64,000 nucleotides of DNA from IMGVR_UViG_3300028654_000001:124001-188000, one strand, 5' to 3'; numbered from the stretch's first letter, positions 11,773 to 60,172 are shown. Translations and numbers: made by a program. The notes: a model not told the origin generated them from the letters alone.

Positions 11773-12420
11773 ATGGATGACCTGAGGATCATCAGCCAAG
11801 TGGCCAAGCGAGTGTCAGCTGCGAGCGTGCCACCTGGAAAGGGCTTCTATACGGGCAAGGACAATACCTTCCACGTGTTCCGAAGTTCAACTCACCTGCA
11901 GGTCCGAGATCTGACCCTCGCCGGCAAACGCGGTAAGACCGTGCCGGAGGTTACGATCATCCTGAACGACAACTACTACAAGGGTGACACTGATGAGTGG
12001 TTCGAGACTGTGATGGAGCAACTGGCCAAGTGTGACACTTGGGCTGATGTCAAGAAGGTGGCCGCTGATGCCAAAGAGGCCGCCCCCGATCACGCAGTAG
12101 TCCTTCACGAGCAGAGTATCAAGGCTATTGAAGTGGCCCCCGCAGGTTCTGAAATCAAGTTCAAGACCCTAGCAGGTGAAGAGATCACAGCTAGTCCTGT
12201 TGAGTTCTACGTCCTACATCGATTTTGGTTTGGTCGAGTTGAGGGTGACCCGAAGAAGCCTGGGTTTGCCCAAGACACTGGCTACTGGTCGAACAACAAG
12301 CAGAGTGCAGCCATATTCTACGCCTACCTGAAGGATAATATGTCCAAGGTAATGAAGATGGGCATCCGCGAGTTACGAGAGCTTTGGAGTGAGCTGAAGG
12401 TCAGCTACCGTTACCACTGA
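11773..12420 (+). CDS. hypothetical with N-terminal MxDLxIIxxVxxRV tag
   Basis: MDDLRIISQVAKRVSAA; 215-aa ORF. Confidence 0.85.
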   Translation: MDDLRIISQVAKRVSAASVPPGKGFYTGKDNTFHVFRSSTHLQVRDLTLAGKRGKTVPEVTIILNDNYYKGDTDEWFETVMEQLAKCDTWADVKKVAADAKEAAPDHAVVLHEQSIKAIEVAPAGSEIKFKTLAGEEITASPVEFYVLHRFWFGRVEGDPKKPGFAQDTGYWSNNKQSAAIFYAYLKDNMSKVMKMGIRELRELWSELKVSYRYH

Positions 12421-12426
12421 GGCCCC

Positions 12427-12705
12427 ATGAACGATCTAACCCTCATTGCTCGAGTTGTGGAACGTGTGGCGGCCGCCAACATGTGGGGTGTTGATGTCCG
12501 AGCCATCAACACGTGGCTGAAGAAGAATGTCACCTTTCCTGCGAAGGTCCTCCAGAACCGGGCAAACGTGGTCGACATCGGGACCGATGTGAAGAACGAC
12601 CTTGGGCCATACTCGGAGGCTTTCCAGAAGGCTTTCCCGGGAACCAAGGTGACTCAACCTGGGATGAAGAACTACCTACGCGTCGTGTTCCCCGTCAACA
12701 GGTGA
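12427..12705 (+). CDS. hypothetical with N-terminal MxDLxIIxRVxxRV tag
   Basis: MNDLTLIARVVERVAAA. Confidence 0.8.
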   Translation: MNDLTLIARVVERVAAANMWGVDVRAINTWLKKNVTFPAKVLQNRANVVDIGTDVKNDLGPYSEAFQKAFPGTKVTQPGMKNYLRVVFPVNR

Positions 12706-12711
12706 GTCTGA

Positions 12712-13698
12712 TCACTTCCAACCCTTTATGTAGTCATGAAATTGTCTGCATAGAGATTGGTGCCACGTCCAGAAAGTGTAGCGTTTGAAGTGCTCAAAAC
12801 CCAGTGCCTTGAAATGAGGTACCACGACATCCTCAACAAGAGCAATCACGTGCCGTCGCCCGAGTGATTTGTAGTAGTTTGCTGACACCTGAATCAACAA
12901 TGACAAGGCCTCAGGGTCTTCTTGAACCATGAAAACACAGAAGGCATTAGTCAGTTCACTTAGATTCAGACCATGGGATGATACTTCCAGCACTGAGTAC
13001 CCAACCAAAGTACCAGAACGGTAAACCAAAAAGAACTCCTGACGACGTTCAAGGCCAATCTTTTTGTAGTCATCAGAGATACAGTTGAAGTACTCTTTGG
13101 TATCCTTCCCTAATAGGGGTAGGGTTTCAGATGAAGAGTGCCTCACCTCCAGACAAGTAGAGGTTGGGACCTCGAAAGTTGGCCCCGATAGTCTCATGCA
13201 GTTGAAGTACTGAACTATGGACAGCTCTGGACGTGATACACTGGCGGCCAATGCCTCGTACAAGCGAGAAACACGTTTGTTCTCATGCCGGTAGGTTGCT
13301 CGTATCCATTCAATATTTGAACTCTGCTCAAAGTACTCGAGCAAGGCTAAGTTCAGCATCAGTGCATGAGAGACCTTCTCCCTCTTATAGGGTCGACTCG
13401 CCATGTGCTGAACCATCCACACCTTGTCATAGACCCGTACTGCAGAGAGGTGAGCATAAATGGAGGATCCACGAGTTACCACCAAACCCTTGAACACATT
13501 GTTCGTGTTCATCAGCTTCGATAGCGTTTTCTTTGCAGATTCGAAGTCGATCGTCTGACGCTTCTGTGGGTAGATGAACCCGGAATTCTCTAAAAAGCTC
13601 CATAGCTTCTCAACAGACATACCACTTAGGTCTCTTATTACCGGTTGTTCAACCTCATTTAGTTGATCACACACTACAGGTTGGGTATTGGTCATCAC
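12712..13698 (-). CDS. tandem GNAT-like acyltransferase-fold protein
   Basis: 328 aa; AHLSAVRVYDKVWMVQHMA and YKSLGRRHVIALVED...HFKALGF resemble myxobacterial GNAT-like domains (from memory). Confidence 0.6.
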   Translation of the reverse strand: MMTNTQPVVCDQLNEVEQPVIRDLSGMSVEKLWSFLENSGFIYPQKRQTIDFESAKKTLSKLMNTNNVFKGLVVTRGSSIYAHLSAVRVYDKVWMVQHMASRPYKREKVSHALMLNLALLEYFEQSSNIEWIRATYRHENKRVSRLYEALAASVSRPELSIVQYFNCMRLSGPTFEVPTSTCLEVRHSSSETLPLLGKDTKEYFNCISDDYKKIGLERRQEFFLVYRSGTLVGYSVLEVSSHGLNLSELTNAFCVFMVQEDPEALSLLIQVSANYYKSLGRRHVIALVEDVVVPHFKALGFEHFKRYTFWTWHQSLCRQFHDYIKGWK

Positions 13699-14129
13699 AC
13701 TTTACCGCCGTTAGTCAGGTCAACATTTAGACTCTCAACCCTAGTGCGAAGCTCTTCAATGGTCGGAACCACTCGTTGTAGGTGCTTCGGCTTTTCAATT
13801 CCGAGTACGTCTCCTATTCGGAGAAGGATATCAAGATCGGCTTTGCAGCGACCCCTCCAATCGAACTGGTCAAGTACAGCTCTTCGGACTTGTTCTCGAT
13901 AGGCCTCCTCCTCGTACTGTTCGATAGTGTAGAGAAGGGCTGCCGTGGAATAGGCATTGTGTTCTACTCCCGGGATGTTGGTCACATCGAATTGCTTTCC
14001 ACCGTTGATGGTCACATACAATCGACCAACCTTGGTGATGGTTGTCTTGACCACGCGCCCTTTGGGATCGTTGGTGTACGTGTCCGTATAGAGGGCTGGC
14101 ATCCCTACTTTCCAATCAGAGAGGGACAT
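13695..14129 (-). CDS. hypothetical beta-barrel protein
   Basis: TITKVGRLYVTI motif common in phage proteins; coupled on both sides. Confidence 0.75.
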   Translation of the reverse strand: MSLSDWKVGMPALYTDTYTNDPKGRVVKTTITKVGRLYVTINGGKQFDVTNIPGVEHNAYSTAALLYTIEQYEEEAYREQVRRAVLDQFDWRGRCKADLDILLRIGDVLGIEKPKHLQRVVPTIEELRTRVESLNVDLTNGGKV

Positions 14130-14500
14130 CAGTTTTCCTTAGCCTCGAGGGCTGTAACGAGAGTGTTCCGAATCGCATCGAAATCCTTGAGTGGGTGAAC
14201 CTTCATGTGTGATTCGAGGATCATTTCGAACGGGGCGTGGTTTGGATCATTCACCCATTTGACGACTGCACTCACCTTGTAGTAAGCCGTCTTGTCCCCC
14301 AGCTTCGTGTATAGATCGATGGTGAGAGGCACCTTATCATGAGTGCCAGTAATGTGGACCACTTCTCGTTCGTCAACGGTAATCCAGAAGTTGTTCAGAA
14401 GTGGTTTGAAGCACTCTCTGGCGGCAATAAGGGTCACGTTAAGAAAGTAGTTCTTAACTATATCTAACAGTGGGAGAGAGTAATCAAGCGGCATTGCCAT
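14129..14500 (-). CDS. hypothetical protein
   Basis: ORF track; coupled. Confidence 0.75.
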   Translation of the reverse strand: MAMPLDYSLPLLDIVKNYFLNVTLIAARECFKPLLNNFWITVDEREVVHITGTHDKVPLTIDLYTKLGDKTAYYKVSAVVKWVNDPNHAPFEMILESHMKVHPLKDFDAIRNTLVTALEAKEN

Positions 14501-14508
14501 AGTAAGTC

Positions 14509-14907
14509 TCAGGGGTTTGGGTTAGTAGTGAGGAGGGCTCGGACATGACGGGCTCGTGTTTCCCAGGCTTCTTCACTCACCCACCTGTGGTGAATGACAG
14601 AAGCCCCAGAGGAAGGCCCGTGCTTGATCTTAGGAGCATCGGCTACTCGCGCTTGTTGCTCCTTTGCATACTTCCTCCACTTGGCCTCAAATAGGGCTAA
14701 GGTAACTTCAACGTCCTTACCCCGAGCTATGCAGGCGTAGGTATCGGCTAGCATACCGTGAATGGGGGCTTCGGCTACATCCGTTCCCGACCATGACTTG
14801 TAAGCAGCGGTCTCAGCATCCCGTTCATAACGAGCAACTTGTAGGAGATACTCAGCATTCGCGGGTGGGGTAACCTCAGGTAGTGCCTCATATTCAGCTT
14901 GATTCAT
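14509..14907 (-). CDS. hypothetical protein
   Basis: ORF track; AAGGAG SD upstream. Confidence 0.8.
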   Translation of the reverse strand: MNQAEYEALPEVTPPANAEYLLQVARYERDAETAAYKSWSGTDVAEAPIHGMLADTYACIARGKDVEVTLALFEAKWRKYAKEQQARVADAPKIKHGPSSGASVIHHRWVSEEAWETRARHVRALLTTNPNP

Positions 14908-14953
14908 GATAGCTCCTTGAGATTACAACCAGGTAATAAGTTCAGTAAGGAAG

Positions 14954-15034
14954 TTATGGGTTTTTGACCGCTTCGGTACCGGTCATTCCATCGAGGGAGA
15001 GCCTCGATTCCCAGCTGTCTTTCCAGCCCGTCAC
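14954..15034 (-). CDS. 26-aa micro-ORF under a class-I promoter
   Basis: GTG 6 nt after the -10 element; MTGWKDSWESRLSLDGMTGTEAVKNP. Confidence 0.35.
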   Translation of the reverse strand: MTGWKDSWESRLSLDGMTGTEAVKNP

Positions 15035-15040
15035 GCCTTA

Positions 15041-15069
15041 ATATTACGGATGAGAGCTCTGAGTCTCAG
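15041..15069 (-). promoter_or_regulatory. class-I promoter motif
   Basis: CTGAGA-N17-TAATAT. Confidence 0.65.
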
Positions 15070-15139
15070 CACTTATTTTGAGAATTAATTACTCTTTCCC
15101 GTCAGGTACTAAATTCAAGTGAGAGTATAAGGATGAGCC

Positions 15140-15415
15140 TCACGCCTCCGGATTTTCGTACAGTTTAGCTTCACCCCACCTGTAATAGCAACGGACTTTT
15201 TTTCCGTCGGAGCCAGCCGAGCACTGAGTTATCTCAGATACCCCAGCTCGTACCTTCTTGACATCACACGGCCCGAACACTTCTCCAGCTATGAACTGAA
15301 TCAAACTTGGGTCAGCCCAAATCGATGCTACACGCATTATCAGGTGCTGGTGCCTTTCACGAAAGGTTGCCATCTCCTTGTGTGTGGGTTTCCTGTACTC
15401 CTCTTCATTTGGCAT
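15140..15415 (-). CDS. hypothetical protein
   Basis: ORF track; AGGAG SD upstream. Confidence 0.75.
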   Translation of the reverse strand: MPNEEEYRKPTHKEMATFRERHQHLIMRVASIWADPSLIQFIAGEVFGPCDVKKVRAGVSEITQCSAGSDGKKVRCYYRWGEAKLYENPEA

Positions 15416-15446
15416 AGATTGTCTCCTAAGTTCAGATACTTGGGTC

Positions 15447-16611: not shown

Positions 16612-16618
16612 GAGGTTT

Positions 16619-16936: not shown

Positions 16937-16941
16937 GCTCA

Positions 16942-25229: not shown

Positions 25230-25717
25230 CTGCTCCCTGGGTCGAGTATCGAAACATAATCATGTTCCGTGACACTGATCACCGGGGGTCTCTTGTTGAG
25301 CATGTACTTGACGAGTTCGGTACATCCATTCTCACAAGCTTGGATCATGGCTAGAGGGTAGTCAGCATCGGATCGATGTTCTAGGTCCTGGAACATCTGG
25401 TACTGACCGTCTCGAGCAGCCATCTCGAGTGGAGAAAGAGGAGTACCTTTCCCTCCACCAAATACTGGAACAAAACCTCCCATGCGAGAGACCAAGAGAA
25501 TCTCTTCAGGGGTCCTGATAGCAGGGGCATCCTTGAGACGGGTGACGAGGATCGGGAACCCACGGCTGATAGCCCAGGCTAAGAAGATCCCTTCAGCGTT
25601 CGGGTGCTTCAAAGCCCCCTGAACAGCTTTCTTCGTACCCTTTTTCTCCTTTTCCACGTAGGAGGCGACGATCTCTTGCCAGGTAAGGTCCCTCCAGTCC
25701 TTAGGGCCAGGGGTCAT
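25175..25717 (-). CDS. protein with ankyrin-like C-terminal repeats
   Basis: TPLSPLEMAARDG...AMIQACENGCTELVKYML...HMEVLVLL. Confidence 0.6.
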   Translation of the reverse strand: MTPGPKDWRDLTWQEIVASYVEKEKKGTKKAVQGALKHPNAEGIFLAWAISRGFPILVTRLKDAPAIRTPEEILLVSRMGGFVPVFGGGKGTPLSPLEMAARDGQYQMFQDLEHRSDADYPLAMIQACENGCTELVKYMLNKRPPVISVTEHDYVSILDPGSRWNHMEVLVLLQAAGAGK

Positions 25718-26562
25718 AGAGCGATCTCAGGCCTGAGTTGAAGCTGTCCCTTTTTCACCACTTCGAAGAAGACGTAAGGCTCCTTCTTTGCGTAAGGCCG
25801 AGACCTCTCCTCTTCGAGCTCTCCAAGGAAGGCATAGAGCACTTCGCGATCGGTGGTAACCCAATGCTCGAACGAGTCATAGTTCTCAGTATGCTCAGGG
25901 TAACCGTGCCCAGGTGCCTCCCTAGAACGTTGGTCTCCTGGCACAAGTATGCTGTTCCTTGAGTAGATGAGCACTGCGTAGTGATGTCCCTCAGGGACAT
26001 CACCTGGACCTTTCACCCGAATCATCCCTTCAGAAGGTGTAGACCTAAGGTTGTTTGTGATTGCTCTATCAATGGCTGGACTAAAGTGATAGTAGTCCAT
26101 GTTGATGTCCCAAGGATTCTCGTAAAGAACTGGAGCTGGTCCATCCGGATCATCAATTACCCAGGCACGACTTATGATTCCTGGTCTGCTGACTCTGAAA
26201 CTGAGTTGGTACCCCTGAGTGTGACTGACGATGATCGGCCCACCAAAGTCCATGCTGGCTACAGGGGTGTCATCCTCCGGATGTATGAATAGACTTAGTC
26301 CATCAACTGTTACTGATTCCTTAGGCAGGTAACACCCTCTGAAGACAACAAACTTACGAGTCCAGATGCTGTACTCACCTCGTAGGTTGCGCTCCCTGCA
26401 ACTGATAGGCTCTGGCACTTTGATGCAGAGCCTATCATGGGATTCTCCAGCAAAAGTCAACCCAGCCCAAACGTAGGACTTGGGTGGATCTGGGTCTCGT
26501 CGGGAGCTTCGGTCAGGCCTGACATCACTCCAATACTCTTCGATGGGATCTTCATTGCTCAT
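25714..26562 (-). CDS. hypothetical with N-terminal IESYW-type tag
   Basis: MSNEDPIEEYWSDVRP. Confidence 0.85.
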   Translation of the reverse strand: MSNEDPIEEYWSDVRPDRSSRRDPDPPKSYVWAGLTFAGESHDRLCIKVPEPISCRERNLRGEYSIWTRKFVVFRGCYLPKESVTVDGLSLFIHPEDDTPVASMDFGGPIIVSHTQGYQLSFRVSRPGIISRAWVIDDPDGPAPVLYENPWDINMDYYHFSPAIDRAITNNLRSTPSEGMIRVKGPGDVPEGHHYAVLIYSRNSILVPGDQRSREAPGHGYPEHTENYDSFEHWVTTDREVLYAFLGELEEERSRPYAKKEPYVFFEVVKKGQLQLRPEIAL

Positions 26563-26577: not shown

Positions 26578-27045
26578 TCAGGGATCTCTCGCTCCAAAGC
26601 TCTCTCTATCGTGCACTAGAGTTGGTATTGATTCTGAAGTCTTGGTAAGCCAACATGCATTGAGGTATCCAAAACCCGTGATACGAAACCAAAGGTTGAG
26701 AGGTTCGTGTTTGGAAACCGTTCTCCTATAGAGGATTAGTCTAGCTATCGGCTCGTTTCCAACTTCTGATAGGTACAGGTGGAGGGCTTCAACCTCGTGC
26801 GACTCATTAGGTGCATAGTTGAGCTGGAAGACTTGGATCTCTTGTTCCCTTTCAGTCTCCTCAATGATAACTCTCATCGGGGCAGGGATCGGGATCATGA
26901 TGCGAGTCCCAACAGTCTTCCTCCTGGATATGAACCCTACCCAAGCGAAACCCCTTCCCTCTTGTTCGACCTTGGCGATCTCCTCTGCTGAGCGCCGGTT
27001 GGGTCTTATTAGCCCCCAATCAGATTCAATGCTGTCGTCGACCAT
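26578..27045 (-). CDS. hypothetical with N-terminal IESYW-type tag
   Basis: MVDDSIESDWGLIRP; body partly resembles the N-terminal half of 25714-26562. Confidence 0.85.
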   Translation of the reverse strand: MVDDSIESDWGLIRPNRRSAEEIAKVEQEGRGFAWVGFISRRKTVGTRIMIPIPAPMRVIIEETEREQEIQVFQLNYAPNESHEVEALHLYLSEVGNEPIARLILYRRTVSKHEPLNLWFRITGFGYLNACWLTKTSESIPTLVHDRESFGARDP

Positions 27046-40452: not shown

Positions 40453-41979
40453 TCACCAAGCTATCCCTGACATTGTTAGCCAGTGCTGCATTTGTGTGTC
40501 ATCTCCAACTGAGGCCTGAACGCACCATCCGTGCAACACACAGTTGAGATAGTAGCTACCGAACCCAATACCCCACGGATTAGTCAAGATAGCTTGCGCT
40601 ACTCCAGTCACCAAGGACCCAGCCACACCATCGACATAAAGAATCACAGTTGAATTTGTACGACTGACGCGCAGCTCATAATTATGCTTTCCAACGACGC
40701 ATAAACCAACGGGACCCCCGCCAGGTGCAGCCTGCGAGTAACCAACGTTACTCCCGGCTGAGTTGAATCCTGTGGCACAATGAATGCCTACATATTGATT
40801 GGTCCCTGGGCATAAGAACAATAGCTCCCCGGCACCACTAGCCGAAGAAAGTGTCATTGTCCAACGCAAGGTGAAATCTGAAGTAGCTCCCGCTGCTCCC
40901 GCTGCCACACCAGTTACAGCTAAAGCTGTAGTACACGTAACACCTTTCAAAGCGGATGAGTAGGTCCCCTGATGACCAGCAGCAAAAGATAAGTTACGAC
41001 TAGCACCAGATGCATCAGGCCACGTCGGAACCAGGGCACCATCTGCCAGCCCCAGAGTGTCAGCGTAATACAGCTGTTCAGGGCTATCTGCTAGTATAGC
41101 AGCTCTAGCCACAAGCAGCCCGTCCGGTGTCTGGTCATCTGCGGACACGTCTGTCGTGTAAATACGAACATGACCTCGCACATTGAACTTGTATAGTGGG
41201 TCACCACTAATCTGTAGCTCAAGTGAGTTACCATTGGCGACCCATATAGGGTTCCACGTAATGTCCGTGACTTCAAGGGGTATGCCAAGAGATTGCGAGG
41301 TCACAATGAGAGAAGCAGACCCGATTCGATGAGCTGTACAAACCAGTGTGCCAGTCAAGAATTTTTGACCGGCGGCCGAGCACATAAGGTCCACCTCAGC
41401 TCTCACCACTGTGGACGGAGGCACCGGAAACGGAAGACCAGGATTTGACCCAACAACTGTTGTTATAGATACAGGGCCAGATCCGGCGGCGATAAAGGTC
41501 GTGGCCAATGACGCCCCTGAGGGGGTCTCCCAATCAGCAGCAGTCCCACTCGTAGCAGTCAGGACCTGTCCAGGGGTTGGAGCTGCTGCTGAAGAGACTG
41601 AGACTACTGTAGTGGCCGTTCTAATTCCAGAGGCTGTTCGATCATTGGAGAGACGAGAGTCACTGGTCTGAACCGTGTTCTGAGGGATCTCAGCTTCGAT
41701 CTCGGTCCTCAACTCATCGATACCACCTGCGGTCAGCACCCCAATTACTACCGATCCTGCCGCATGAGAGGAATCTGTTGTTCCCTCTACCCCTCTAAGC
41801 ACAGTCCAAGTTGTTCCTGAGATCCCAGTCACCAGCATTAGTTCCTGACCTATTCTGATCCGAAACTCTGGTTGATTAGGGAAATGAGTTGTGACTTGAA
41901 CCGAGATGCTCAAGTCACCAGATCCAACTGAGGTAGCTAATGTGGTTGAGGCTTGATTGGAGAATCTCTCAGTCGTCAT
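40453..41979 (-). CDS. virion-associated/adhesin-like protein with LamG/lectin-like C-terminus
   Basis: 508 aa; N-terminal FRIRIGQELMLVTG..TWTVLRG repeat-like module, T/S/A-rich linker, C-terminal beta-sandwich (VILYVDG). Confidence 0.7.
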   Translation of the reverse strand: MTTERFSNQASTTLATSVGSGDLSISVQVTTHFPNQPEFRIRIGQELMLVTGISGTTWTVLRGVEGTTDSSHAAGSVVIGVLTAGGIDELRTEIEAEIPQNTVQTSDSRLSNDRTASGIRTATTVVSVSSAAAPTPGQVLTATSGTAADWETPSGASLATTFIAAGSGPVSITTVVGSNPGLPFPVPPSTVVRAEVDLMCSAAGQKFLTGTLVCTAHRIGSASLIVTSQSLGIPLEVTDITWNPIWVANGNSLELQISGDPLYKFNVRGHVRIYTTDVSADDQTPDGLLVARAAILADSPEQLYYADTLGLADGALVPTWPDASGASRNLSFAAGHQGTYSSALKGVTCTTALAVTGVAAGAAGATSDFTLRWTMTLSSASGAGELLFLCPGTNQYVGIHCATGFNSAGSNVGYSQAAPGGGPVGLCVVGKHNYELRVSRTNSTVILYVDGVAGSLVTGVAQAILTNPWGIGFGSYYLNCVLHGWCVQASVGDDTQMQHWLTMSGIAW

Positions 41980-45060: not shown

Positions 45061-45399
45061 ATGAAGCTTTCGTCAGATCCGGCTCAAAGAGTAGTCCGAA
45101 GGGTACTCAATGCCAACAAGAGCCCCATGGTGTCTGTTCTCTACGGAACCATGGGGCTCAAAAATAGTTATCAGGGTCCATTCTCTGAGACTACTAAGTG
45201 TGTGAAGTGTGGTAAGACTGCCCGCATTGCGATGGTAGTCATGGAAGAGGGGACTGGTCAGGATGAGGGTCCCTATGTAGCGGACGTTCACCAAAACGAG
45301 CTAGGAAAGTTTTGGGTTCATGATGTGATATCCGCCGCCACTTACCTGTGTACTGACGGGGACTGTGCAACGGCCACGACGCTCTGGAACCAGAGTTAG
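45061..45399 (+). CDS. Cys-rich hypothetical with RVVRRV N-terminal segment
   Basis: PAQRVVRRVLNA; CVKC...C..GDC. Confidence 0.75.
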   Translation: MKLSSDPAQRVVRRVLNANKSPMVSVLYGTMGLKNSYQGPFSETTKCVKCGKTARIAMVVMEEGTGQDEGPYVADVHQNELGKFWVHDVISAATYLCTDGDCATATTLWNQS

Positions 45400-45405: not shown

Positions 45406-45864
45406 TTACCACTTGACATCTTCAAGTGCTGCTTCTGCCCAATACCCTCCTGGGCCTGCCCAAATAACCTTAGGTGGGTCTGGGCGGTGAAAAATAGAAC
45501 TACCCATAGCTTTCCAAGCTGTAGATCCTTCGTTAACGTGGTGAGCTATCACCTTGTAAGTCTTTCCAGCTGGTTTCTCAGGTTTACCAACCACCTTAAC
45601 GAGGGTTCCCTTAGGGATAAGGATCTCTTTCCCCTTAAGATTAGGGATAGGCTCTCCAACTCCATACTTAGGTGGTTTTACACCACGACGTCGATCTTCA
45701 TCCCCTACTAACCAACCTTCATTATAGTCAGAATCAACCCACTCAGATAACTTTGGGTCTGGATCTTTTCCTTGAAGGCCATCCATATACCCCTCGTGAG
45801 TCCAATTACTAGTTCTAGATACTACCCTTCGAACTACTCTGGTTATGATTCCTAGATCGTTCAT
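45406..45864 (-). CDS. hypothetical, tagged paralog of 59738-60172
   Basis: MNDLGIITRVVRRVVS plus IPKGT.VKVVGK..KPAG...GGYWAEA. Confidence 0.85.
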   Translation of the reverse strand: MNDLGIITRVVRRVVSRTSNWTHEGYMDGLQGKDPDPKLSEWVDSDYNEGWLVGDEDRRRGVKPPKYGVGEPIPNLKGKEILIPKGTLVKVVGKPEKPAGKTYKVIAHHVNEGSTAWKAMGSSIFHRPDPPKVIWAGPGGYWAEAALEDVKW

Positions 45865-45964
45865 ACTCGATACTAGTTCATAAGTAAGTTATACCCCTGA
45901 TTGTTTCATTGGAAAGGTACTACCATTCAGGGGTACTCCAAACCGAGACGCTCTGAAACCAGAG

Positions 45965-46687
45965 TTAGATCTTAGTATCCATCCAAACACAAGTCTTCCC
46001 AGGTACCATCCCCTGCTTGGTGAAGAACTGGACTGCTCCACTTGTAGGGCATGCCCAAGCATAGAGGTAGGTCACACCCTGCTTCTTGAGTTCGTCAACA
46101 ACGCCTCGATACAATCTGACTGCTAGACTCGAACCCCGCCACTTCTCAGCTACAGCAATGTACACAAGACAGGCTTGAGTTGGATCATCACAGTGATCAG
46201 GATCTCCAGTTTGACCCAAGCAGAAGCCTTGAATCTCACCTTCCTTATCACACGCCAAGAAAACAACAGCACAGGGATTCTCAAGTGTAACCCTGAGTTC
46301 ATCTTCGCTCATGAATTCCACTTGGGAGCTTACTTTTATCTCAGGGATAGTAATCCCAAAAGAGTGGATACTCTCAGCATCTTTCGCGGTTGCTCGATGA
46401 ATTGTAAGGTCGAAGTCGTCTTCTGATCTGATCCTAGTATTCTGAGCTAACCTGTCTTTTACTGTGCCCTTAGACCGATTCTTGTTATACTCGAGGATAT
46501 CCTCGTAGACCTCTCGTGGCATCATTAGGTGCACGACACCATTATCATCCGTGAGTGCTACAGCACCGTCAGGATCGTTCTCATCCATGAGTCGGGCCTG
46601 AATGCACTTACCCGAAAAGGCAAACGGGATGCGGTCGAGTTCCTCAAAGGCAGCCTTGACGGCGGCTAGGTCAATATCATCAGCCAT
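45965..46687 (-). CDS. GNAT N-acetyltransferase with extra N-terminal domain
   Basis: YIAVAEKWRGSSLA acetyl-CoA-binding motif; AVQFFTKQGM. Confidence 0.8.
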   Translation of the reverse strand: MADDIDLAAVKAAFEELDRIPFAFSGKCIQARLMDENDPDGAVALTDDNGVVHLMMPREVYEDILEYNKNRSKGTVKDRLAQNTRIRSEDDFDLTIHRATAKDAESIHSFGITIPEIKVSSQVEFMSEDELRVTLENPCAVVFLACDKEGEIQGFCLGQTGDPDHCDDPTQACLVYIAVAEKWRGSSLAVRLYRGVVDELKKQGVTYLYAWACPTSGAVQFFTKQGMVPGKTCVWMDTKI

Positions 46688-48496: not shown

Positions 48497-48847
48497 TCAG
48501 TCAAGCCATCCTCGCTTTCGGCGGTAGGCCTTCTGAACGCTTCCGTATACCACCGTAAAGGTCCACTCATATGAAGAGAAAATACCCCCTGTGATGAACA
48601 GCCACCAGACCCAGCGGTGCAGCTTGTACCACCTGGGTCTGAACACAACACAGGTCTCTCCCTCGTAGTCAGATGCAGAAGCTCCGTCGACTGGTTCCTC
48701 GAGCAAGTACAAGGCCTCTTCAGAGATAGAGTAACCTTCGATCTTGGTCGGATTGATGTGGTCACATACACCGCCCTTGGGTGGCTCCTTCCCTGGTTTA
48801 CGCGGCGGGCGGAGACCTTCCCAGTAGGACTCGATGTCATCAGTCAT
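48497..48847 (-). CDS. membrane protein with N-terminal IESYW tag
   Basis: MTDDIESYWEGLRP; hydrophobic WVWWLFITGGIFSSY. Confidence 0.85.
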   Translation of the reverse strand: MTDDIESYWEGLRPPRKPGKEPPKGGVCDHINPTKIEGYSISEEALYLLEEPVDGASASDYEGETCVVFRPRWYKLHRWVWWLFITGGIFSSYEWTFTVVYGSVQKAYRRKRGWLD

Positions 48848-49182
48848 CAAAGCACATCCGGCCACATACGGGAAATTTCGTCAAGACGATTGAGCACCTC
48901 CTTGTTTTCATGAGGTTTATCGAAGTCATAATCAGTCAAGATTCCCTGAAAGTGCTCTCTGATTGTCCCGAAGCTGACTTCAACTCCAAAAGTGTTAAAT
49001 ACCGTAGAGATGTACTCCCGGATCTTCAAGTCAGCCGCAAAGGTGGGTACCAAAACCCTTCGGCTAATCCTAATCAAAGCCTTCAGCAAGACCATGGAAT
49101 TGATAGACTTTTCGACTATCAACTGAGGACGAACCACCTCCCAATAGGACTCGATGCTATCAGTCCTTGATCCTGTAGCCAT
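48847..49182 (-). CDS. hypothetical with N-terminal IESYW tag
   Basis: MATGSRTDSIESYWEVVRP. Confidence 0.85.
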   Translation of the reverse strand: MATGSRTDSIESYWEVVRPQLIVEKSINSMVLLKALIRISRRVLVPTFAADLKIREYISTVFNTFGVEVSFGTIREHFQGILTDYDFDKPHENKEVLNRLDEISRMWPDVL

Positions 49183-49259: not shown

Positions 49260-50735
49260 CTAGGCTGGATCCTCTAAAGAGAAGTCATCCTCAGAAGGCT
49301 CCTGGTTCCTACCCTCTATTGAATCCCTCGGAGGCTGGTAGGCACGTCTCTCGGTTGGGTAGAGCTCCTCTGGGCGAGGGAACGTGCCTGGGGCACTCAT
49401 AGGTAGGAACTCCACTCGGAAGTTAAGTAGTACTCTCCTACGCCAGTCATCCTCCCCATAGTGGTTGAAGGTTCTCCTTCCTAACTCATCAAGAGAGGTC
49501 TGTAGATTAGTGAGAACCCGCCTGTTGAGGGGTTCTGCCATGTTATCGGATGTCTCAATGATTCCATTGAGCAGTAGGGCAACTCGCCTGAGGTTGATAC
49601 GGGTGTCATACTCCCGCTCATCATCGGAACGTCTCTCAGGTAACTCTAGGTCTGCTGTATTATGGCCTAGAAACATGGTACCAGCAGCAGCCATTCGTCT
49701 CTCATGTTGGGGTACCTCGTTCCTATTGATCTCCGACAATCTTGTTAGAGCATGACCATCATTCTCGCTTGTGAAGTATCTGCGAATCTCATCCTGAGTT
49801 GGTAGGTGTCCTACCATCCCCATGTACTGCTCAGTGTACGCTAGGATCCTACGATCTGCAGCAGTACTGTCATGGGCATGAGTCCCCTGTCGATGAACAC
49901 TCCCTCGACGAATATGGTAGGTCACCTCAAAGGTGTTGAGGGTATCTTGCCACCAATTAGTACGCATGTTGTGGGCAGCACCTTGAGCTTCAACCCAAGT
50001 GAACAACTCGGTGATGATCGAATCAATGTGCTCATCGTCCCCAACCCTGTCGACGAGTTCTTGAAGGTTGCTCAGTAGTAGGGCCAATCTTCGCATATCA
50101 AGAATGGATTGGCTTTGGGACTCGCCCACTTCCTGAGGGGCTGCTACTTCTTGGGGTAAACTTGGAGACTGGATATCATCATCGAGACCCCCTACACGAA
50201 CAATCAAGTCTAGGATTCGTTCCTGAACCCTCATGCTCGAGATGAAGTGCCCACGCATAATGGATATCGGTGGGTATGAGCGGTTCTCCTTGCAGTACTC
50301 TAGAACGTAGTCACTGATCTGCTTATCTATCTCAGAAATGTTTTGAGTAGGAGTGTTTTGGTGCAGCCTTCTCAAGTACGCCCAGAGCTCACCCCCAGTC
50401 AGTGTTCGACTGTACAACTGACCCTGCACCACTCGGTCTAGCAGACTAACACACCCAGGTTTTGACCACTCTTCGAAGGTTATACGAATATCCTCGTAGT
50501 CAGGGTACTCATCCGTATTCCGGTGTTGCCGATTCAAATGAGTAATGATCTGGTTAGCATTCTCAGTCTGGGAAATGTACTCAGGGGGCGGATTTGCAAA
50601 CACTCGAGTCAGAATGTTGAGTATCTGTTGCCCACTAGGGTTCCATTGGTCCCGAGCCTCTTGGGGTACCCCTGGGGAGGATCGCAGTCCCTGTCGATGA
50701 TCCCAGTAGGATTCAACTTCATTATCGTCTGGCAT
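49260..50735 (-). CDS. large helical repeat protein with N-terminal IESYW-type tag
   Basis: MPDDNEVESYWD; internal repeat MRRLALLLSNL / LRRVALLLNGI. Confidence 0.85.
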   Translation of the reverse strand: MPDDNEVESYWDHRQGLRSSPGVPQEARDQWNPSGQQILNILTRVFANPPPEYISQTENANQIITHLNRQHRNTDEYPDYEDIRITFEEWSKPGCVSLLDRVVQGQLYSRTLTGGELWAYLRRLHQNTPTQNISEIDKQISDYVLEYCKENRSYPPISIMRGHFISSMRVQERILDLIVRVGGLDDDIQSPSLPQEVAAPQEVGESQSQSILDMRRLALLLSNLQELVDRVGDDEHIDSIITELFTWVEAQGAAHNMRTNWWQDTLNTFEVTYHIRRGSVHRQGTHAHDSTAADRRILAYTEQYMGMVGHLPTQDEIRRYFTSENDGHALTRLSEINRNEVPQHERRMAAAGTMFLGHNTADLELPERRSDDEREYDTRINLRRVALLLNGIIETSDNMAEPLNRRVLTNLQTSLDELGRRTFNHYGEDDWRRRVLLNFRVEFLPMSAPGTFPRPEELYPTERRAYQPPRDSIEGRNQEPSEDDFSLEDPA

Positions 50736-51213
50736 GATCATCCTCAGAATTAGACAAGAGATCACTCATCTCTTGAAAGTAACTCAAGCGTGGATCTTCA
50801 GGCCCAATGTTGAGGTCTTGGACTCTACTATCAATCACGTCTATCAACCTGGTGAAGTTGTAGCGGATCCCAGCTGAGTTCAAGAGATTACGTAATCGAA
50901 CCGTTGTATATACAAGCTCTCGAAAGAGAGACCCGTTTGATCTCTCTGTCCCGCTTAAGTGGTGCGAGTAGGGTGGGTCTGTAACGACGGAAGTGAAGGT
51001 TACGTTTGATTCTTCAACTTCAACAGGGGAGTCATCACCATAATCAATGGTGTAACGAGTCACGTAGGGGGTTGACTCCTCATCGGACTCAACTGGGTCT
51101 TCTAAAGCAACCACGTCGACAATAGGCACATTGGTTAGGGTACTCAGATCCCGCTGGGGTCGAAGTCCTTCCCAAAAGGACTCGATGTCATCAGTGTCAG
51201 TTGAGGTACCCAT
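50722..51213 (-). CDS. hypothetical with N-terminal IESYW tag
   Basis: MGTSTDTDDIESFWEGLRP. Confidence 0.85.
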   Translation of the reverse strand: MGTSTDTDDIESFWEGLRPQRDLSTLTNVPIVDVVALEDPVESDEESTPYVTRYTIDYGDDSPVEVEESNVTFTSVVTDPPYSHHLSGTERSNGSLFRELVYTTVRLRNLLNSAGIRYNFTRLIDVIDSRVQDLNIGPEDPRLSYFQEMSDLLSNSEDDHARR

Positions 51214-54936: not shown

Positions 54937-54942
54937 GATGCA

Positions 54943-55756: not shown

Positions 55757-55757
55757 T

Positions 55758-56791: not shown

Positions 56792-57579
56792 TCCGGTAGT
56801 TCAAGCATCCAACTCTCCCAACCTGGGAGCGATAGGAACAAGTGGAGACCCAACAGCTCTTCGGCTGCTGGTACCTCCCAATCATGCACGCAAATGGGTT
56901 GGTTACGATCGAGATCGAACAGGGTTCGATTGCTCTTTGGGGACCTCTCCACCTTCGTTCGAGAGGTCAACAAGTAGCGACGGCCAGTGTCCTGGCCCAC
57001 GGTGACAAATTGGTTTGTCCTTCTAAAGTCTTCCAGCTGCCCCGGGTTCAAGAAGGTCTCTAGAACCTTCGTAGCTCGAATCTCAGCCTTGACGAATTCA
57101 GGGACGGGACAACCTCTATCAGGGACGGCTACGGTCGTAGCGGCTACAGCAAGGGCTGGCAACCTGATGGCATCCCAGTACTCTTCGATGCTCGCGGGTG
57201 AGGCACTAGGAGCCCTCGCGGGTAGTGGGTTGATCTTGTATTCTTGGAGGGTCCCGTTGGATAGCTTCACTACCGATACTTGATTTCTACCGGGCTTCAG
57301 TCTGGAAGTAAGGTGCTTAGCCACCTTGGTGATAGGTGCTTGCAGTTGGACAGTCACCCCCCTCTCTGTCCTACAGATTGACTCTAGAATCTGTGGGAAA
57401 GATTCAGGTGTTGCCCATGGTTTGAAGATCATCCCGCCCCTCAGAGCTCTTTTCCGGAAGGATTCCATAACCCTCAGCTCCTCGTTTGACAGGCTGTACA
57501 TGCGAAGGGAGGTCTCCGTTTGACTTACTGCTTCCAGTTGCAGATCTCCGTGAAAACTCGGAATGTACCACATCACCAT
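56788..57579 (-). CDS. hypothetical with internal IEEYW tag
   Basis: MWYIPSFHGD N-terminus; internal SIEEYWDAIRLP. Confidence 0.85.
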   Translation of the reverse strand: MVMWYIPSFHGDLQLEAVSQTETSLRMYSLSNEELRVMESFRKRALRGGMIFKPWATPESFPQILESICRTERGVTVQLQAPITKVAKHLTSRLKPGRNQVSVVKLSNGTLQEYKINPLPARAPSASPASIEEYWDAIRLPALAVAATTVAVPDRGCPVPEFVKAEIRATKVLETFLNPGQLEDFRRTNQFVTVGQDTGRRYLLTSRTKVERSPKSNRTLFDLDRNQPICVHDWEVPAAEELLGLHLFLSLPGWESWMLELPE

Positions 57580-58054
57580 CTTGATTTCTTTCCTCTAGGT
57601 TGCAAAATAACTTATCCACGCGGGCCTTGAGTATACCCTTTCTTTCAGGGAACTCAGTCAAATCCTGCAAAGCTATCAGGTCTTTCAGCTCCTGGGCTTC
57701 TGCTGCAGCTAACTGGGATCGTTGGGCTTCAAGGTGGATCTGGGATAGGGTGCTCATCTGAACATCCATATTCCGTTTTTGTTGTCTTGGATCTTGATAC
57801 TGGGTGACCCCGTTAAAGGTGATATCTCCAACAAACTCAACACCCCCATCATCACCCTCTTCAAAGCGAGCTCGCTTGATATCGTCCCTCGGAACACGCG
57901 GGGAGGCCTCGGCTCTCATAAGGGACTTTGCCACTTCACATAGACTGGCTACTGAAGCGAATCGAGTCCGCTTATCTGAGTTCAGCTTCTCAATCATCAG
58001 TTGACGGAGAGCATCGAGTGCGGTCTTCAAGTAACCACTTTCCTCAACTTCCAT
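57404..58054 (-). CDS. hypothetical helical protein
   Basis: ORF track; tail overlaps the next gene by 176 nt. Confidence 0.7.
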   Translation of the reverse strand: MEVEESGYLKTALDALRQLMIEKLNSDKRTRFASVASLCEVAKSLMRAEASPRVPRDDIKRARFEEGDDGGVEFVGDITFNGVTQYQDPRQQKRNMDVQMSTLSQIHLEAQRSQLAAAEAQELKDLIALQDLTEFPERKGILKARVDKLFCNLEERNQDGDVVHSEFSRRSATGSSKSNGDLPSHVQPVKRGAEGYGILPEKSSEGRDDLQTMGNT

Positions 58055-58160
58055 GAAGTCCAGCTCAGAATCAGCTTTTTTGTACACCGGTTACCCATTA
58101 CACCGAATGCCCCAAGAACGCAAGATATTGGGCTTCGGTGTAAACAGCCTGCTGTAAACA

Positions 58161-58751
58161 ATGGAGGACGACTTCGAAGAGTACTGGGCGGCTATCAGGC
58201 CTGAACGAAAACCGTCTATGAAGGATCTCCGGGACGAGCTCCTCAAGATTGCCAAACTTCGTGAAGAAGAGTGGGACTTGATGACCCATAGGAACTACCC
58301 TTCACCTCCCGAGAGCTTGTTCGAGGAGTCGCGTGAGGAACCCTTCTTCAATGGTCCAGGCGAGAGTATTCCGGCAGATTTACCACTGGTTGTCAATATT
58401 GGGAACCCTGATCTGGGAGATGTAGCAACCAGAGAGTACATCGAGTCTATTCTCCACACTTACTCTGAGGTGCATCAATTTCATATAGATGGAGGCGGAT
58501 CTGTTCGAGTTGACTACCCTCCATCAATTATTGGCGACGGTCCGATCTCTGGGGGTGGATCGCTTCTCATCACTACAGGTGAGGGTTTACAAGCTTCTAG
58601 CTGGGGTAGTACCAATGAGCTCAGGCTTGAACTACAGAATAACTCAGAATTCAGAGTTTTACAGGATCGAGTTACCAGACTCGAACAAGAAAATCGAGAA
58701 CTGCGATCTCGTGTGAATACCCTAGCATTAGCCATAAGGAATCGACGATGA
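58161..58751 (+). CDS. hypothetical with N-terminal IESYW-type tag and C-terminal coiled coil
   Basis: MEDDFEEYWAAIRP; LQDRVTRLEQENRELRSRV. Confidence 0.85.
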   Translation: MEDDFEEYWAAIRPERKPSMKDLRDELLKIAKLREEEWDLMTHRNYPSPPESLFEESREEPFFNGPGESIPADLPLVVNIGNPDLGDVATREYIESILHTYSEVHQFHIDGGGSVRVDYPPSIIGDGPISGGGSLLITTGEGLQASSWGSTNELRLELQNNSEFRVLQDRVTRLEQENRELRSRVNTLALAIRNRR

Positions 58752-58966
58752 CCAAACAAGTACTGTGGCCTGCTAAGCAGGATTTTGAATCACCCTACGG
58801 GTGCGACCTTCCTGAACGAGATGAACCGGGAGGCCTACGAAGAACCGGAGCTACGGTGTGCAAGCACGGAGTTTACCCGTGTGGTACCTGCGGAACTACC
58901 ACGCATCTGGATACCGTCCACACGACTGTCAAGGGGGAAGGGATAGTCGGAAGCATTCCCCGATAG
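58748..58966 (+). CDS. small Cys/His-rich hypothetical
   Basis: CKHGVYPCGTC; ATGA coupling. Confidence 0.7.
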   Translation: MTKQVLWPAKQDFESPYGCDLPERDEPGGLRRTGATVCKHGVYPCGTCGTTTHLDTVHTTVKGEGIVGSIPR

Positions 58967-59021
58967 ACCACCTCGATCTATCTCCAGCAGAAACCATCAG
59001 GGTGGTGGGCAACTGGTGGCA

Positions 59022-59741
59022 TCACATTCCCCAGAAGTTGATGTCCATGATTCCGCCACGTTTGCTGAGCTTAATGCCAAATGGCCTCTCACAAATGATG
59101 ATATTCTTGCTGTTCACCACGTAGAGAGCATAGGCTGACTTCAGGAACTTGACAGCTGCCGCTAGGATCTCCGAGTCGTGCTCGCTGTACTTGACCCCTT
59201 CGAGACCCTGGCAGAAGTGGTAGTGGGCAATGAAGGGCAGTGAGGACATCGCTGACAGGATGGACACCTTTGCTGAGTCACATAGCGGTCGGCACATCTC
59301 AAATGGCATGTCCGAGATCAGCAGAGGAGACATCCAATTAACCATTCTGCTCATGACCATTTGATGATTGGCAGCCCCAATTGCCTGAATGATTGCAGGT
59401 TCGACACTGATGGATAGCTTATTAGCTATGGTATCCGGAGTCCCCTGCACACTCTGATCTTTCATGGCTTCGTAAGCACTAAGTGGATTGGACTTCCAAG
59501 TGATCTGATACCCAGAGTCCAGAATGTCCCTCATGAGAACAACAGCCGCTTCCTCTGCTAGCTGGATGTCTTCGGTATCAAGAACCTCAGAGGTGGCGTA
59601 ACCCATGAACTCGGCTCTGACTACCTCCAAGCGTGCTTCCTCCGAAGCAGGTAGGTTGGGTCGGTAGTCTCCAATGACGTTTGGGTACTGCTGAGAGTAA
59701 GGGAGATTGTAGGGTTTCACTTTAATAGTAACGTTTTTCAT
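59022..59741 (-). CDS. hypothetical protein
   Basis: 239-aa ORF; coupled. Confidence 0.8.
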   Translation of the reverse strand: MKNVTIKVKPYNLPYSQQYPNVIGDYRPNLPASEEARLEVVRAEFMGYATSEVLDTEDIQLAEEAAVVLMRDILDSGYQITWKSNPLSAYEAMKDQSVQGTPDTIANKLSISVEPAIIQAIGAANHQMVMSRMVNWMSPLLISDMPFEMCRPLCDSAKVSILSAMSSLPFIAHYHFCQGLEGVKYSEHDSEILAAAVKFLKSAYALYVVNSKNIIICERPFGIKLSKRGGIMDINFWGM

Positions 59742-60172
59742 GAGTTTGCCTTCAGGATATCATTCAAGTCGGCTTCTGCCCAGTAGCCACCAGCACCTGG
59801 CCACACAACCTTCGGAGATGTGGGTCGGACGTAATCCTTCCGAAATGCACTCCCTTGAGTATAGAAGGTGCTTCCAGCGTTAACGTGATCTACCGTAATA
59901 CTGTAAGTCCTACCAGCGGGCTTCGGGTCTTTCCCTACCACCTTGACAATGGTCCCCTTGGGAATGACAATGGTCTGCCCCTTCTTGATTGGAAGGTCCT
60001 CTTCCCGGTAGTACCCTAGGAACTGAGGGGGCCGCGTGCCAACTTTGAGCTCGTCTCTGTCATACAAGCCTACGAGGTAACCCTCTTCATACTCAGGGCT
60101 GGTCTGCTCTGGGTCTTGATCTTTCCCGTAGAAGGCATCCATGTAACCTTGGTGAATTGGGCTTGTGTACAT
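59738..60172 (-). CDS. hypothetical, untagged leaderless paralog of 45406-45864
   Basis: IPKGTIVKVVGKDPKPAG...GGYWAEA. Confidence 0.85.
   Translation of the reverse strand: MYTSPIHQGYMDAFYGKDQDPEQTSPEYEEGYLVGLYDRDELKVGTRPPQFLGYYREEDLPIKKGQTIVIPKGTIVKVVGKDPKPAGRTYSITVDHVNAGSTFYTQGSAFRKDYVRPTSPKVVWPGAGGYWAEADLNDILKANS

What the first reader, a model, noticed from the sequence alone, without database searches (positions are those of the whole stretch)
11773..60172. Third tag, M(N/D)DLxIIxRVxxRV, with a natural tagged/untagged paralog pair
Seen: 11773 (MDDLRIISQVAKRV), 12427 (MNDLTLIARVVERV) and 45864 (MNDLGIITRVVRRV) share this N-terminus, and 45061 has a partial RVVRRV. ATGAACGATCTA is shared at the DNA level by 12427 and 45864. 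The body of 45406-45864 is a clear paralog of 59738-60172, which lacks the tag and sits under a class-I leaderless promoter. None of the tagged genes has the class-I promoter. Inference: a basic amphipathic tag on late-expressed copies, possibly a capsid-loading or prohead-protease signal; the same domain would then be deployed both from the virion and by early expression.
Basis: partly seen in the sequence, partly recalled or inferred. Interest (0 to 1): 0.7.

Follow-up and report, generated by a model that had tools for sequence, protein, structure and literature searches.

The report
Shared peptide tag on huge-phage effectors
Three small genes in this 512-kb soil phage start with the same 17-residue peptide, one of about 30 such tags in the genome, placed on unrelated enzymes and most likely an address label that sends them to one shared phage machine.

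Summary
The strict motif occurs exactly three times in the six-frame translation of the 512,571-bp genome, each time at an ATG just after a stop. A profile finds about 26 to 28 such N-termini in this genome and 10 to 14 in each of three relatives. The core is [LI]-[IAV]-x-[RN]-V-[AV]-x-R-[YFV], predicted helical, and conserved as peptide, not as DNA.

Carriers are unrelated. They include five of the genome's ten HExxH peptidases, a type IB topoisomerase sited between terminase and portal, a DRAT-like ADP-ribosyltransferase and a J-domain protein. In some relatives the topoisomerase is a domain of a giant polyprotein, with the motif at domain junctions.

The tag is modular: more distant homologues of the 45406-45864 protein lack it. 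No tagged gene has the GGTGTA promoter. Five carry ACTTATAG 11-14 nt before the start codon; no untagged gene does.

New lead: an intein-containing phage ClpX, with no phage ClpP, sits among six tagged genes. In seven of eight related genomes the gene just downstream of ClpX is tagged, and these genes are mostly unrelated to each other.

Best reading: a sorting tag for virion cargo (confidence 0.4). Main rival: a ClpX recognition tag (0.3). Neither is demonstrated.

The parts
11773..11826 (+). Tag (residues 1-18, MDDLRIISQVAKRVSAAS) of the 215-aa protein 11773-12420
   Evidence: 18.7 bits with the independent profile. An 86%-identical orthologue in another contig keeps the core residues.
11773..12420 (+). 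Tagged gene, 215 aa, no known domain
11751..11759 (+). CTTTTATAG, a degenerate copy of the ACTTATAG promoter-like box, 13 nt before the ATG
12427..12480 (+). Tag (MNDLTLIARVVERVAAAN) of the 92-aa protein 12427-12705. The gene starts 6 nt after the stop of 11773-12420, so it is probably co-transcribed with it.
   Evidence: 26.8 bits
12427..12705 (+). Tagged gene, 92 aa, no known domain
45811..45864 (-). Tag (MNDLGIITRVVRRVVSRT) of the 152-aa protein 45406-45864
   Evidence: 24.3 bits. In the AF2 model residues 1-17 have pLDDT below 50 and lie apart from a confident body.
45406..45864 (-). Tagged paralogue: two helices plus a small beta-domain, with only weak SH3b-like structural matches. One closer homologue keeps the tag; more distant ones lack it.
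45878..45885 (-). ACTTATGA, a one-mismatch copy of the ACTTATAG box, 13 nt before the ATG
45061..45399 (+). Weak or partial member: 112-aa Cys-rich protein with QRVVRRVLNAN at residues 9-19
   Evidence: 13.6 bits; 13.7 bits
59738..60172 (-). Untagged paralogue, 144 aa, 54% identical to 45406-45864
60173..60195 (-). Upstream region of the untagged paralogue, with GGTGCGTAAT, a variant of the GGTGTA class-I box

Best explanation
The three N-termini belong to a clade-wide family of detachable peptide tags of about 17 residues. The core is [LI]-[IAV]-x-[RN]-V-[AV]-x-R-[YFV]-x-x-A, predicted to be a single helix with an acidic start and a basic end. The tag sits at the extreme N-terminus of about 26-28 otherwise unrelated proteins in this genome. 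It is rarely at the C-terminus or behind a small first domain, and in relatives it lies between domains of polyproteins. Most likely it is an address label read by one common partner, marking the phage's cargo set: effector enzymes co-assembled into the prohead and delivered with the DNA. That would work like the capsid targeting sequence of T4 internal proteins and Alt. The label may then be trimmed by the head maturation protease. Shown here: the family, its positional specificity, its modularity, selection on the peptide rather than the DNA, the kinds of carriers, their placement in the head operon, and a private promoter motif. Candidate readers are the scaffold or capsid interior, the conserved tagged 130-aa head-operon protein, and the phage ClpX.
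For: The family is real and position-specific. There are 28 six-frame hits of at least 12 bits against 4 in the reversed control, nearly all with a start codon at -2..+1 of the motif. An independent profile gives 33 against 6, and 28 of the 33 have a start codon at -4..+3. Relatives G001, G004 and G005 have 12-14 hits against 0-2 in controls. Selection acts on the peptide: codon sharing is 1.03 times expectation. The tag is modular. The more distant homologues of 45406-45864 lack it, and it is detached and low-confidence in that protein's model. In the 130-aa family it is a confident helix at residues 2-17. It also lies outside the Pfam catalytic domains of its carriers. The carriers fit injected-effector repertoires: topoisomerase IB at 4e-27, a DRAT-like ADP-ribosyltransferase, a J-domain protein, and 5 of the genome's 10 HExxH proteins. 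T4 Alt, an ADP-ribosyltransferase, is packaged by an N-terminal targeting peptide (PMC5694885; PMC5512222). In relatives the same topoisomerase is a domain of polyproteins of 960-2,800 aa, with the motif at junctions; such phage proteins are proposed to be packaged and injected (PMC5512222). Location also fits: the tagged topoisomerase overlaps the end of the large terminase gene and lies between it and the portal gene. A tagged 130-aa protein with 363 homologues sits just upstream of the putative small-terminase gene, which precedes the large terminase gene. ACTTATAG lies 11-14 nt before the start of 5 of 26 tagged genes and 0 of 630 others, p 7e-8. A candidate protease site, [KR][TVI]AS, is enriched: 34 observed against 15.2 +/- 3.9 expected. 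It occurs 4 times in the Q-rich scaffold-like protein, with 3 of those sites conserved in relatives, and it follows the tag within about 10 residues in at least two carriers.
Against: There is no virion proteomics, no expression data and no cultured relative with the tag; Tunturi_5 has none. None of the scaffold-like, protease, capsid and portal proteins scanned carries the tag. The T4-type (S77) and HK97-type (S78) protease families are absent, so the T4 analogy is functional only. The cleavage motif is an inference from enrichment. The conserved clustering of tagged genes around ClpX is not predicted by a plain co-assembly model. The three window genes lie in a small-gene accessory region, not in the head module.
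Confidence: 0.4

Rival explanations
1. The tag is a recognition or tethering signal for the phage's own ClpX unfoldase. It would bind the zinc-finger N-domain like the tail of the SspB adaptor, or act as a terminal degron. Tagged enzymes would then be unfolded or, with host ClpP, destroyed on schedule. This would keep dangerous peptidases, the ADP-ribosyltransferase and the topoisomerase in check, independently of the virion.
For: A ClpX gene (C4 zinc finger, AAA_2 domain and D2-small domain, with an intein in the P-loop, a GYVG pore loop and an MGF loop where E. coli has IGF) lies inside a run of six tagged genes. In 7 of 8 related genomes the gene immediately downstream of ClpX starts with the tag, and these downstream genes are mostly not homologous to each other. 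Tags sit at chain termini, as ClpX signals do. E. coli SspB ends in ALRVVK, the segment that binds the ClpX N-domain (PMC9963277), and this resembles the R-V-[VA] core. The two more distant phages without ClpX have few or no tags: LR745208.1 has 9 weak hits and Tunturi_5 has none.
Against: The complex prediction of two N-domains with the tagged protein gave no answer, score 0.02. The resemblance to the SspB tail is three residues, and the SspB tail is C-terminal. The tag does not look like the known N-terminal ClpX degron classes (my knowledge of Flynn et al. 2003; not tested here). There is no phage ClpP. The co-occurrence rests on two negative lineages and is confounded by relatedness; the 130-aa tagged family is absent from those same two phages. 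This reading gives no reason for tagged genes to sit inside the terminase-portal operon.
Confidence: 0.3
2. The tag is a homotypic or hub-binding assembly helix. Tagged proteins bundle with each other or with the universally conserved tagged 130-aa protein to form one multi-enzyme body. The site of action is unspecified.
For: The tag is a confident single helix in the 130-aa family. Some family members carry doubled tags. The 130-aa family co-occurs with abundant tags and is absent from the two phages with few or no tags.
Against: The invariant V, R and aromatic residues point to a specific pocket rather than a generic coiled coil. The hydrophobic moment is not above shuffles. No test of self-association was possible.
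Confidence: 0.12
3. The tag is a membrane-targeting amphipathic helix or a secretion signal.
For: It is N-terminal and helical, with hydrophobic positions at i, i+3/4 and i+7.
Against: There is no hydrophobic stretch. Arg is near-invariant at core position 12 and common at position 8, and the start is acidic. Mean helical moment is 0.37 against 0.28 +/- 0.14 for shuffles. The carriers are nucleic-acid and protein-modifying enzymes.
Confidence: 0.05
4. There is no function of the peptide itself: the similarity comes from common descent of whole genes, chance, or a conserved RNA or translation-start element.
For: Twelve nucleotides are shared by two copies. Some tagged neighbours are paralogues, such as the pair at genome 503662 and 504600.
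Against: The bodies are unrelated, with different Pfam families or none, and the all-against-all matches are confined to the N-termini. Synonymous sites are randomised. The motif is found by an independent profile and in genomes with 49-59% GC.
Confidence: 0.03

Closest known systems
Capsid targeting sequence (CTS) of phage T4 internal proteins IPI-III and Alt
   Same: A 10-20-residue N-terminal peptide shared by unrelated proteins, including an ADP-ribosyltransferase. It is separable from the body. In T4 it directs incorporation into the prohead and is then cut off by the head protease (PMC5694885).
   Different: No sequence resemblance is evident. This genome has no T4-type S77 protease. There are about 30 carriers instead of a handful. 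The tag occasionally sits at the C-terminus or between domains. Incorporation and cleavage are unproven here.
ClpX N-domain-binding tail of the SspB adaptor (ALRVVK)
   Same: A short terminal peptide with an R-V-V core. A ClpX with the zinc-finger N-domain is encoded next to tagged genes.
   Different: The SspB tail is C-terminal, sits on one adaptor protein, and tethers rather than marks substrates. Here the peptide is longer, helical by prediction, N-terminal and present on about 30 proteins. Binding is untested.
Polyvalent proteins of phages and conjugative elements (Iyer et al. 2017, PMC5512222)
   Same: The same kinds of domains: zincin metallopeptidases, ADP-ribosyltransferase and nucleic-acid enzymes. 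In relatives the topoisomerase really is one domain of such a giant protein, with the motif at domain junctions.
   Different: In this genome the domains are separate genes, each with its own copy of the tag. No shared tag or junction motif came up in my term searches of that paper.
Cargo-loading peptides of encapsulins
   Same: A short peptide that attaches diverse enzymes to the inside of an HK97-fold shell; the capsid protein here is HK97-like.
   Different: Encapsulin peptides are usually C-terminal, extended and of a different motif (my knowledge; not tested here).

Membership tests
T4-type capsid targeting sequence | Short N-terminal peptide shared by otherwise unrelated proteins | tested here: met
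T4-type capsid targeting sequence | Peptide is a separable module, not part of the fold | tested here: met
   More distant homologues lack it. It is low-pLDDT and detached in the model. It lies outside the Pfam domains.
T4-type capsid targeting sequence | Peptide ends at a prohead-protease cleavage site and is removed | tested here: inconclusive
   [KR][TVI]AS is enriched (34 against 15.2 +/- 3.9), occurs 4 times in the scaffold-like protein and follows some tags. There is no biochemical evidence.
T4-type capsid targeting sequence | T4 gp21-type (Peptidase_S77) head protease | tested here: not met
   No S77 or S78 match. The head protease matches phrog_18299 instead.
T4-type capsid targeting sequence | Carriers are found inside the virion | not testable with these tools
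   The phage is uncultured and known only from rhizosphere metagenomes.
ClpX recognition or tethering signal | A ClpX with a C4 zinc-finger N-domain is available | tested here: met
   PF06689, PF07724 and PF10431 on genome 277071-279446. It is conserved in G001-G005 and G009.
ClpX recognition or tethering signal | Signal at a chain terminus | tested here: met
   A start codon lies at -2..+1 of the motif in nearly all cases. Two copies are C-terminal.
ClpX recognition or tethering signal | Sequence match to a known ClpX-binding motif | tested here: inconclusive
   Only the R-V-[VA] core is shared with the SspB tail ALRVVK.
ClpX recognition or tethering signal | Physical binding to ClpX | tested here: inconclusive
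   The complex prediction scored 0.02, which the tool reports as 'no answer'.
ClpX recognition or tethering signal | ClpP partner for degradation | tested here: not met
   No CLP_protease in the phage genome. An MGF loop suggests docking to a host ClpP is possible.
Polyvalent proteins | Many effector domains in one polypeptide | tested here: not met
   They are separate genes in this genome. The feature is met in related contigs L038, L045, L049, L050 and L052.
Polyvalent proteins | Domain repertoire with zincin metallopeptidase, ADP-ribosyltransferase and nucleic-acid enzymes | tested here: met
Signal peptide or membrane anchor | Uninterrupted hydrophobic core | tested here: not met
   Arg is near-invariant at core position 12 and the commonest residue at position 8, and the N-terminus is acidic.

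The most novel reading that the evidence does not exclude
The phage ClpX, which has no ClpP of its own, is the reader of the tag and works as a protein-handling motor for the virion. It would recognise the terminal tag on about 30 effector enzymes and unfold or thread them into, or hand them to, the assembling prohead. The tagged J-domain protein would help them refold after injection. That would be an ATP-driven protein-loading pathway in a tailed phage. It would also explain why fused polyvalent proteins could be split into many individually tagged genes.
Probability: 0.12. Interest if true: 0.95.

Novelty: new variant of a known kind. Interest (0 to 1): 0.72.

Why it matters
Huge phages carry hundreds of genes of unknown role. 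A recognisable peptide label that picks out about 30 of them per genome, and does so across a whole clade of soil phages of roughly 290-510 kb, gives a sequence-only way to list a functional set. That set is probably the proteins delivered with the DNA. The label also links the set to a private promoter and to a phage-encoded unfoldase. If it is a loading signal, it is a ready-made handle for packaging foreign proteins into large capsids, as the T4 signal has been used. It would also make the old suggestion that phage AAA+ chaperones help load virions directly testable. If it is a ClpX signal, it would be a case of a virus bringing its own substrate-selection system for proteolysis. I found no description of either in the papers searched.

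Tried and rejected
1. DNA or RNA element: rejected, because synonymous codon sharing among tags is 1.03 times expectation.
2. Whole-gene paralogy: rejected, because the similarity is confined to the N-termini and the Pfam domains differ.
3. Complex prediction of two ClpX N-domains plus zinc with the 45406-45864 protein: score 0.02, no answer. Only one job was allowed, so the capsid protein, scaffold, protease and portal were not tried as partners.
4. Fold searches led nowhere. The body of 45406-45864 gives only weak SH3b-like matches and unnamed proteins. The 130-aa protein finds nothing in the viral structure library and nothing in the PDB by profile. The Atlas gave only weak leads: zincin peptidases for the 738-aa tagged protein and nothing useful for the 130-aa protein.
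5. Pfam and PHROGs on the three window proteins: no family.
6. Expression evidence: DNA runs from rhizosphere samples hold the phage, but no RNA run does.
7. Cultured model: Tunturiibacter phage Tunturi_5 (29% terminase identity) has no tags, no ClpX and no 130-aa homologue.
8. Megablast of the window against the phage collection: no match.
9. T4-type and HK97-type protease families: absent.
10. RTAS alone as a cleavage motif was too rare to judge, 6 against 2.7 expected. The broader [KR][TVI]AS is enriched, but it remains an inference.
Full report
WHAT THE WINDOW IS. The window is bases 124,001-188,000 of a 512,571-bp virus record with direct terminal repeats, judged complete, at 49% GC. It was assembled from rhizosphere metagenomes. 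A rough gene call gives 655 genes. Large structural genes lie at about 280-460 kb on the minus strand, and the window lies in a region of small genes on both strands. The head module is at 403-421 kb. It holds an HK97-type major capsid protein, a Q-rich scaffold-like protein, a head maturation protease matching phrog_18299, the portal and the large terminase. The nearest named records by terminase are an uncultured 485-kb phage, LR745208.1 (46% identity), and the cultured Tunturiibacter phage Tunturi_5 (29%), whose host is an acidobacterium.

THE OBSERVATION. The four N-termini are exactly as described. The strict pattern occurs three times in all six frames of the whole genome, each time at an ATG 2-8 codons after a stop. 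The bodies of 45406-45864 and 59738-60172 are paralogues: 54% identity, E 4e-35.

The shared 12 nucleotides are a coincidence. After the fourth codon the three copies use different synonymous codons. Over 26 tags, identical residues share a codon 550 times against 535 expected. So the conservation is on the peptide.

THE FAMILY IS MUCH LARGER. An all-against-all comparison of the first 30 residues of every called protein linked the three copies to many other N-termini of the form x-D-L-x-[LI]-[IAV]-x-[RN]-V-[AV]-x-R-[YF]. A 17-column matrix finds 28 places of at least 12 bits in the six-frame translation, against 4 in the reversed sequence. In nearly all of them a start codon lies at -2 to +1 of the motif.

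Eight of the 28 were not seeds, and six of those eight are again at N-termini. One hit is at the C-terminus of a protein that also has the tag at its N-terminus. A second C-terminal copy appeared later.

A matrix built only from three other genomes recovers 33 places in this genome against 6 in the control, 28 of them with a start codon at -4 to +3. It scores the window's copies at 26.8, 24.3 and 18.7 bits, and 45061 at 13.7 bits.

In the pooled alignment of 43 tags, V at column 9 and R at column 12 are each present in 42. Column 13 is Y or F in 36 and V in 5, and the window's three copies are among the five. The start is acidic and the rest basic. The helical hydrophobic moment is not significantly above shuffles.

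AlphaFold2 on the deep 130-aa family puts residues 2-17 in one helix with pLDDT about 80-85. In the 45406-45864 protein the tag is unconfident and detached from a well-predicted body.

WHO CARRIES IT. The carriers include a type IB topoisomerase (PF01028, 4e-27), a DRAT-like ADP-ribosyltransferase, a J-domain protein and several weak zincin matches. Five tagged proteins hold six HExxH motifs, out of only ten HExxH proteins among the 655. The Atlas also points to zincin peptidases for the 738-aa carrier. In each case the tag lies ahead of the catalytic domain. The remaining carriers, including the three window proteins, have no recognisable family.

WHERE THE GENES ARE. The tagged topoisomerase gene overlaps the end of the large terminase gene and lies between it and the portal gene. 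A tagged 130-aa gene sits between a 678-aa protein and the putative small terminase. That 130-aa family has 363 homologues in metagenomes, on contigs up to 470 kb, and nearly all begin with the tag. Other tagged genes lie in small groups at 470-473 kb and 503-505 kb, and as the pair at window 11773 and 12427. The largest group is six genes at 273-282 kb.

THE TAG IS MODULAR AND CLADE-WIDE. Relatives with 52-59% GC carry 12-14 hits each, against 0-2 in reversed controls, mostly at N-termini. An 86%-identical orthologue pair of the two genes at window 11773 and 12427 keeps the core residues while the other tag positions change.

For the 45406-45864 family, one 69%-identical homologue has the tag. 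The more distant ones, including the copy in the 407-kb relative, begin right at the body. The tag has therefore been gained or lost on an otherwise conserved protein.

In about thirty related contigs the topoisomerase keeps the motif ahead of its domain. In several of them it is one domain of a polyprotein of 960-2,800 residues. Other regions of these polyproteins have sequence motifs that I read, untested, as a nucleotidyltransferase, a 2H phosphoesterase and a PAP2 phosphatase. The motif sits at junctions on both sides of the topoisomerase and once at the very C-terminus. These look like the polyvalent proteins of Iyer et al., which are proposed to be packaged and injected (PMC5512222).

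PROMOTERS. GGTGTA lies 15-18 nt before the start codon of 55 genes, most often at 15-16 nt, and within 80 nt of about 90.

Instead, the exact octamer ACTTATAG lies 11-14 nt before the start codon of 5 of 26 tagged genes and of none of 630 others (p 7e-8). Degenerate copies precede further tagged genes, including 11773 (CTTTTATAG) and 45864 (ACTTATGA), each 13 nt from the ATG. The untagged paralogue has GGTGCGTA, a variant rather than a canonical class-I box. The timing of either class cannot be read from sequence, and no RNA run holds the phage.

A POSSIBLE CLEAVAGE MOTIF. Polyprotein junctions repeatedly carry (G/V)RTAS. In this genome [KR][TVI]AS occurs 34 times against 15.2 +/- 3.9 in shuffles. 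Four copies are in the scaffold-like protein, flanking its Q-rich middle, and three of those are conserved in three relatives. In at least two carriers the motif follows the tag within about ten residues. In some members of the 130-aa family that carry an N-terminal fusion, K[VI]AS directly precedes the tag. This is what a maturation-protease site would look like, but it remains an inference.

THE ClpX LEAD. The 791-aa gene in the middle of the six-gene group is a ClpX. It has a C4 zinc finger, an AAA_2 domain and a D2-small domain, with an intein in the P-loop, a GYVG pore loop and an MGF loop where E. coli ClpX has IGF. The genome has no ClpP.

In seven of the eight clade genomes examined, this genome included, the gene immediately downstream of ClpX begins with the tag. 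These are G000, G001, G002, the L115 genome, G003, G004 and G009; the exception is G005. The upstream gene is a conserved tagged zincin peptidase. The downstream genes belong to at least five unrelated families, one of them the J-domain protein. So the association is with the tag, not with one gene.

E. coli SspB ends in ALRVVK, the segment that binds the ClpX N-domain (PMC9963277). The resemblance to the tag core is short. The two more distant phages that lack ClpX have few or no tags, but they also lack the 130-aa family. Two lineages cannot separate function from ancestry.

The one complex prediction allowed was two N-domains with zinc and the 45406-45864 protein. It gave no answer, score 0.02. 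Iyer et al. 2021 had already suggested that ClpX or ClpA of jumbo phages might translocate unfolded proteins or aid virion assembly (PMC7824862).

VERDICT. The tag is a genuine, selected, transferable peptide signal that defines a set of about 30 proteins per genome in a clade of huge soil phages. I rank virion-cargo targeting first (0.4). The reasons are the kinds of carriers, the polyprotein relatives, the head-operon members and the T4 precedent (PMC5694885). ClpX recognition without a virion role is second (0.3). A plain assembly helix, a membrane helix, and chance or an RNA element rank lower; the last is effectively refuted.

I found no description of this motif in the papers searched. 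I rate it a new variant of a known kind of system, namely short terminal targeting peptides.

Noticed in passing
window 8128-8496, 25714-26562, 26578-27045, 48497-48865, 48847-49182, 50722-51213, 58161-58751, and 13 more genes elsewhere in the genome: A second, unrelated N-terminal tag, D-[IL]-E-x-[YF]-W-x-x-[IV]-R-P, usually followed by a Pro-rich stretch, heads at least 20 small proteins. All lie in the accessory regions, and several sit under the GGTGTA promoter.
   Followed up: partly
window 40453-41979 (minus strand) and five other genes in the genome: Six proteins of 235-992 aa start with MTTERFxNQASTxL, and the identity runs on for about 30 residues. This looks like a shared attachment domain of tail-fibre-like proteins.
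   Followed up: no
genome-wide; in the window e.g. upstream of 45965-46687 and 50722-51213: (C/T)GGTGTA lies 15-18 nt before the start codon of 55 genes, most often at 15-16 nt, with no Shine-Dalgarno sequence in between. This implies leaderless or near-leaderless transcripts. Several copies are arranged back to back as TACACC...GGTGTA between divergent genes.
   Followed up: partly
genome 277071-279446 (outside the window; locus L092): The phage ClpX has a Hint plus LAGLIDADG intein splitting its Walker A loop (GPSG | intein | TGKT). The intein is present in G001 and G002 but absent from the L115, G003, G004, G005 and G009 copies.
   Followed up: partly
genome 405231-406670 (locus L154): The scaffold-like protein has a central region of about 300 residues made almost entirely of Q, E and A. 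It is flanked by conserved KTAS and RTAS sites.
   Followed up: partly
genome 400110-403485, next to the capsid gene: Two large ORFs directly downstream of the 289-aa capsid gene share an N-terminal T-E-A-E-L-R...Y-L motif. A third, 409117-409809 within the head module, has it too. They may be homing-endonuclease-like or regulatory insertions in the head module.
   Followed up: no
genome about 390170-390800: A 126-bp unit is repeated at least five times inside the 761-aa gene 389275-391560, which starts with GNQG-type collagen-like repeats.
   Followed up: no
locus L038 (related contig, 2,813-aa ORF): One polyprotein of a relative seems to carry an intein inside a nucleotidyltransferase-like domain, and it ends in the topoisomerase domain preceded by the tag motif. 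I judged the intein and the nucleotidyltransferase by eye and did not test them.
   Followed up: no
window 45965-46687 (minus strand): A GNAT acetyltransferase with a canonical class-I box lies immediately upstream of the tagged gene 45406-45864 on the same strand.
   Followed up: no
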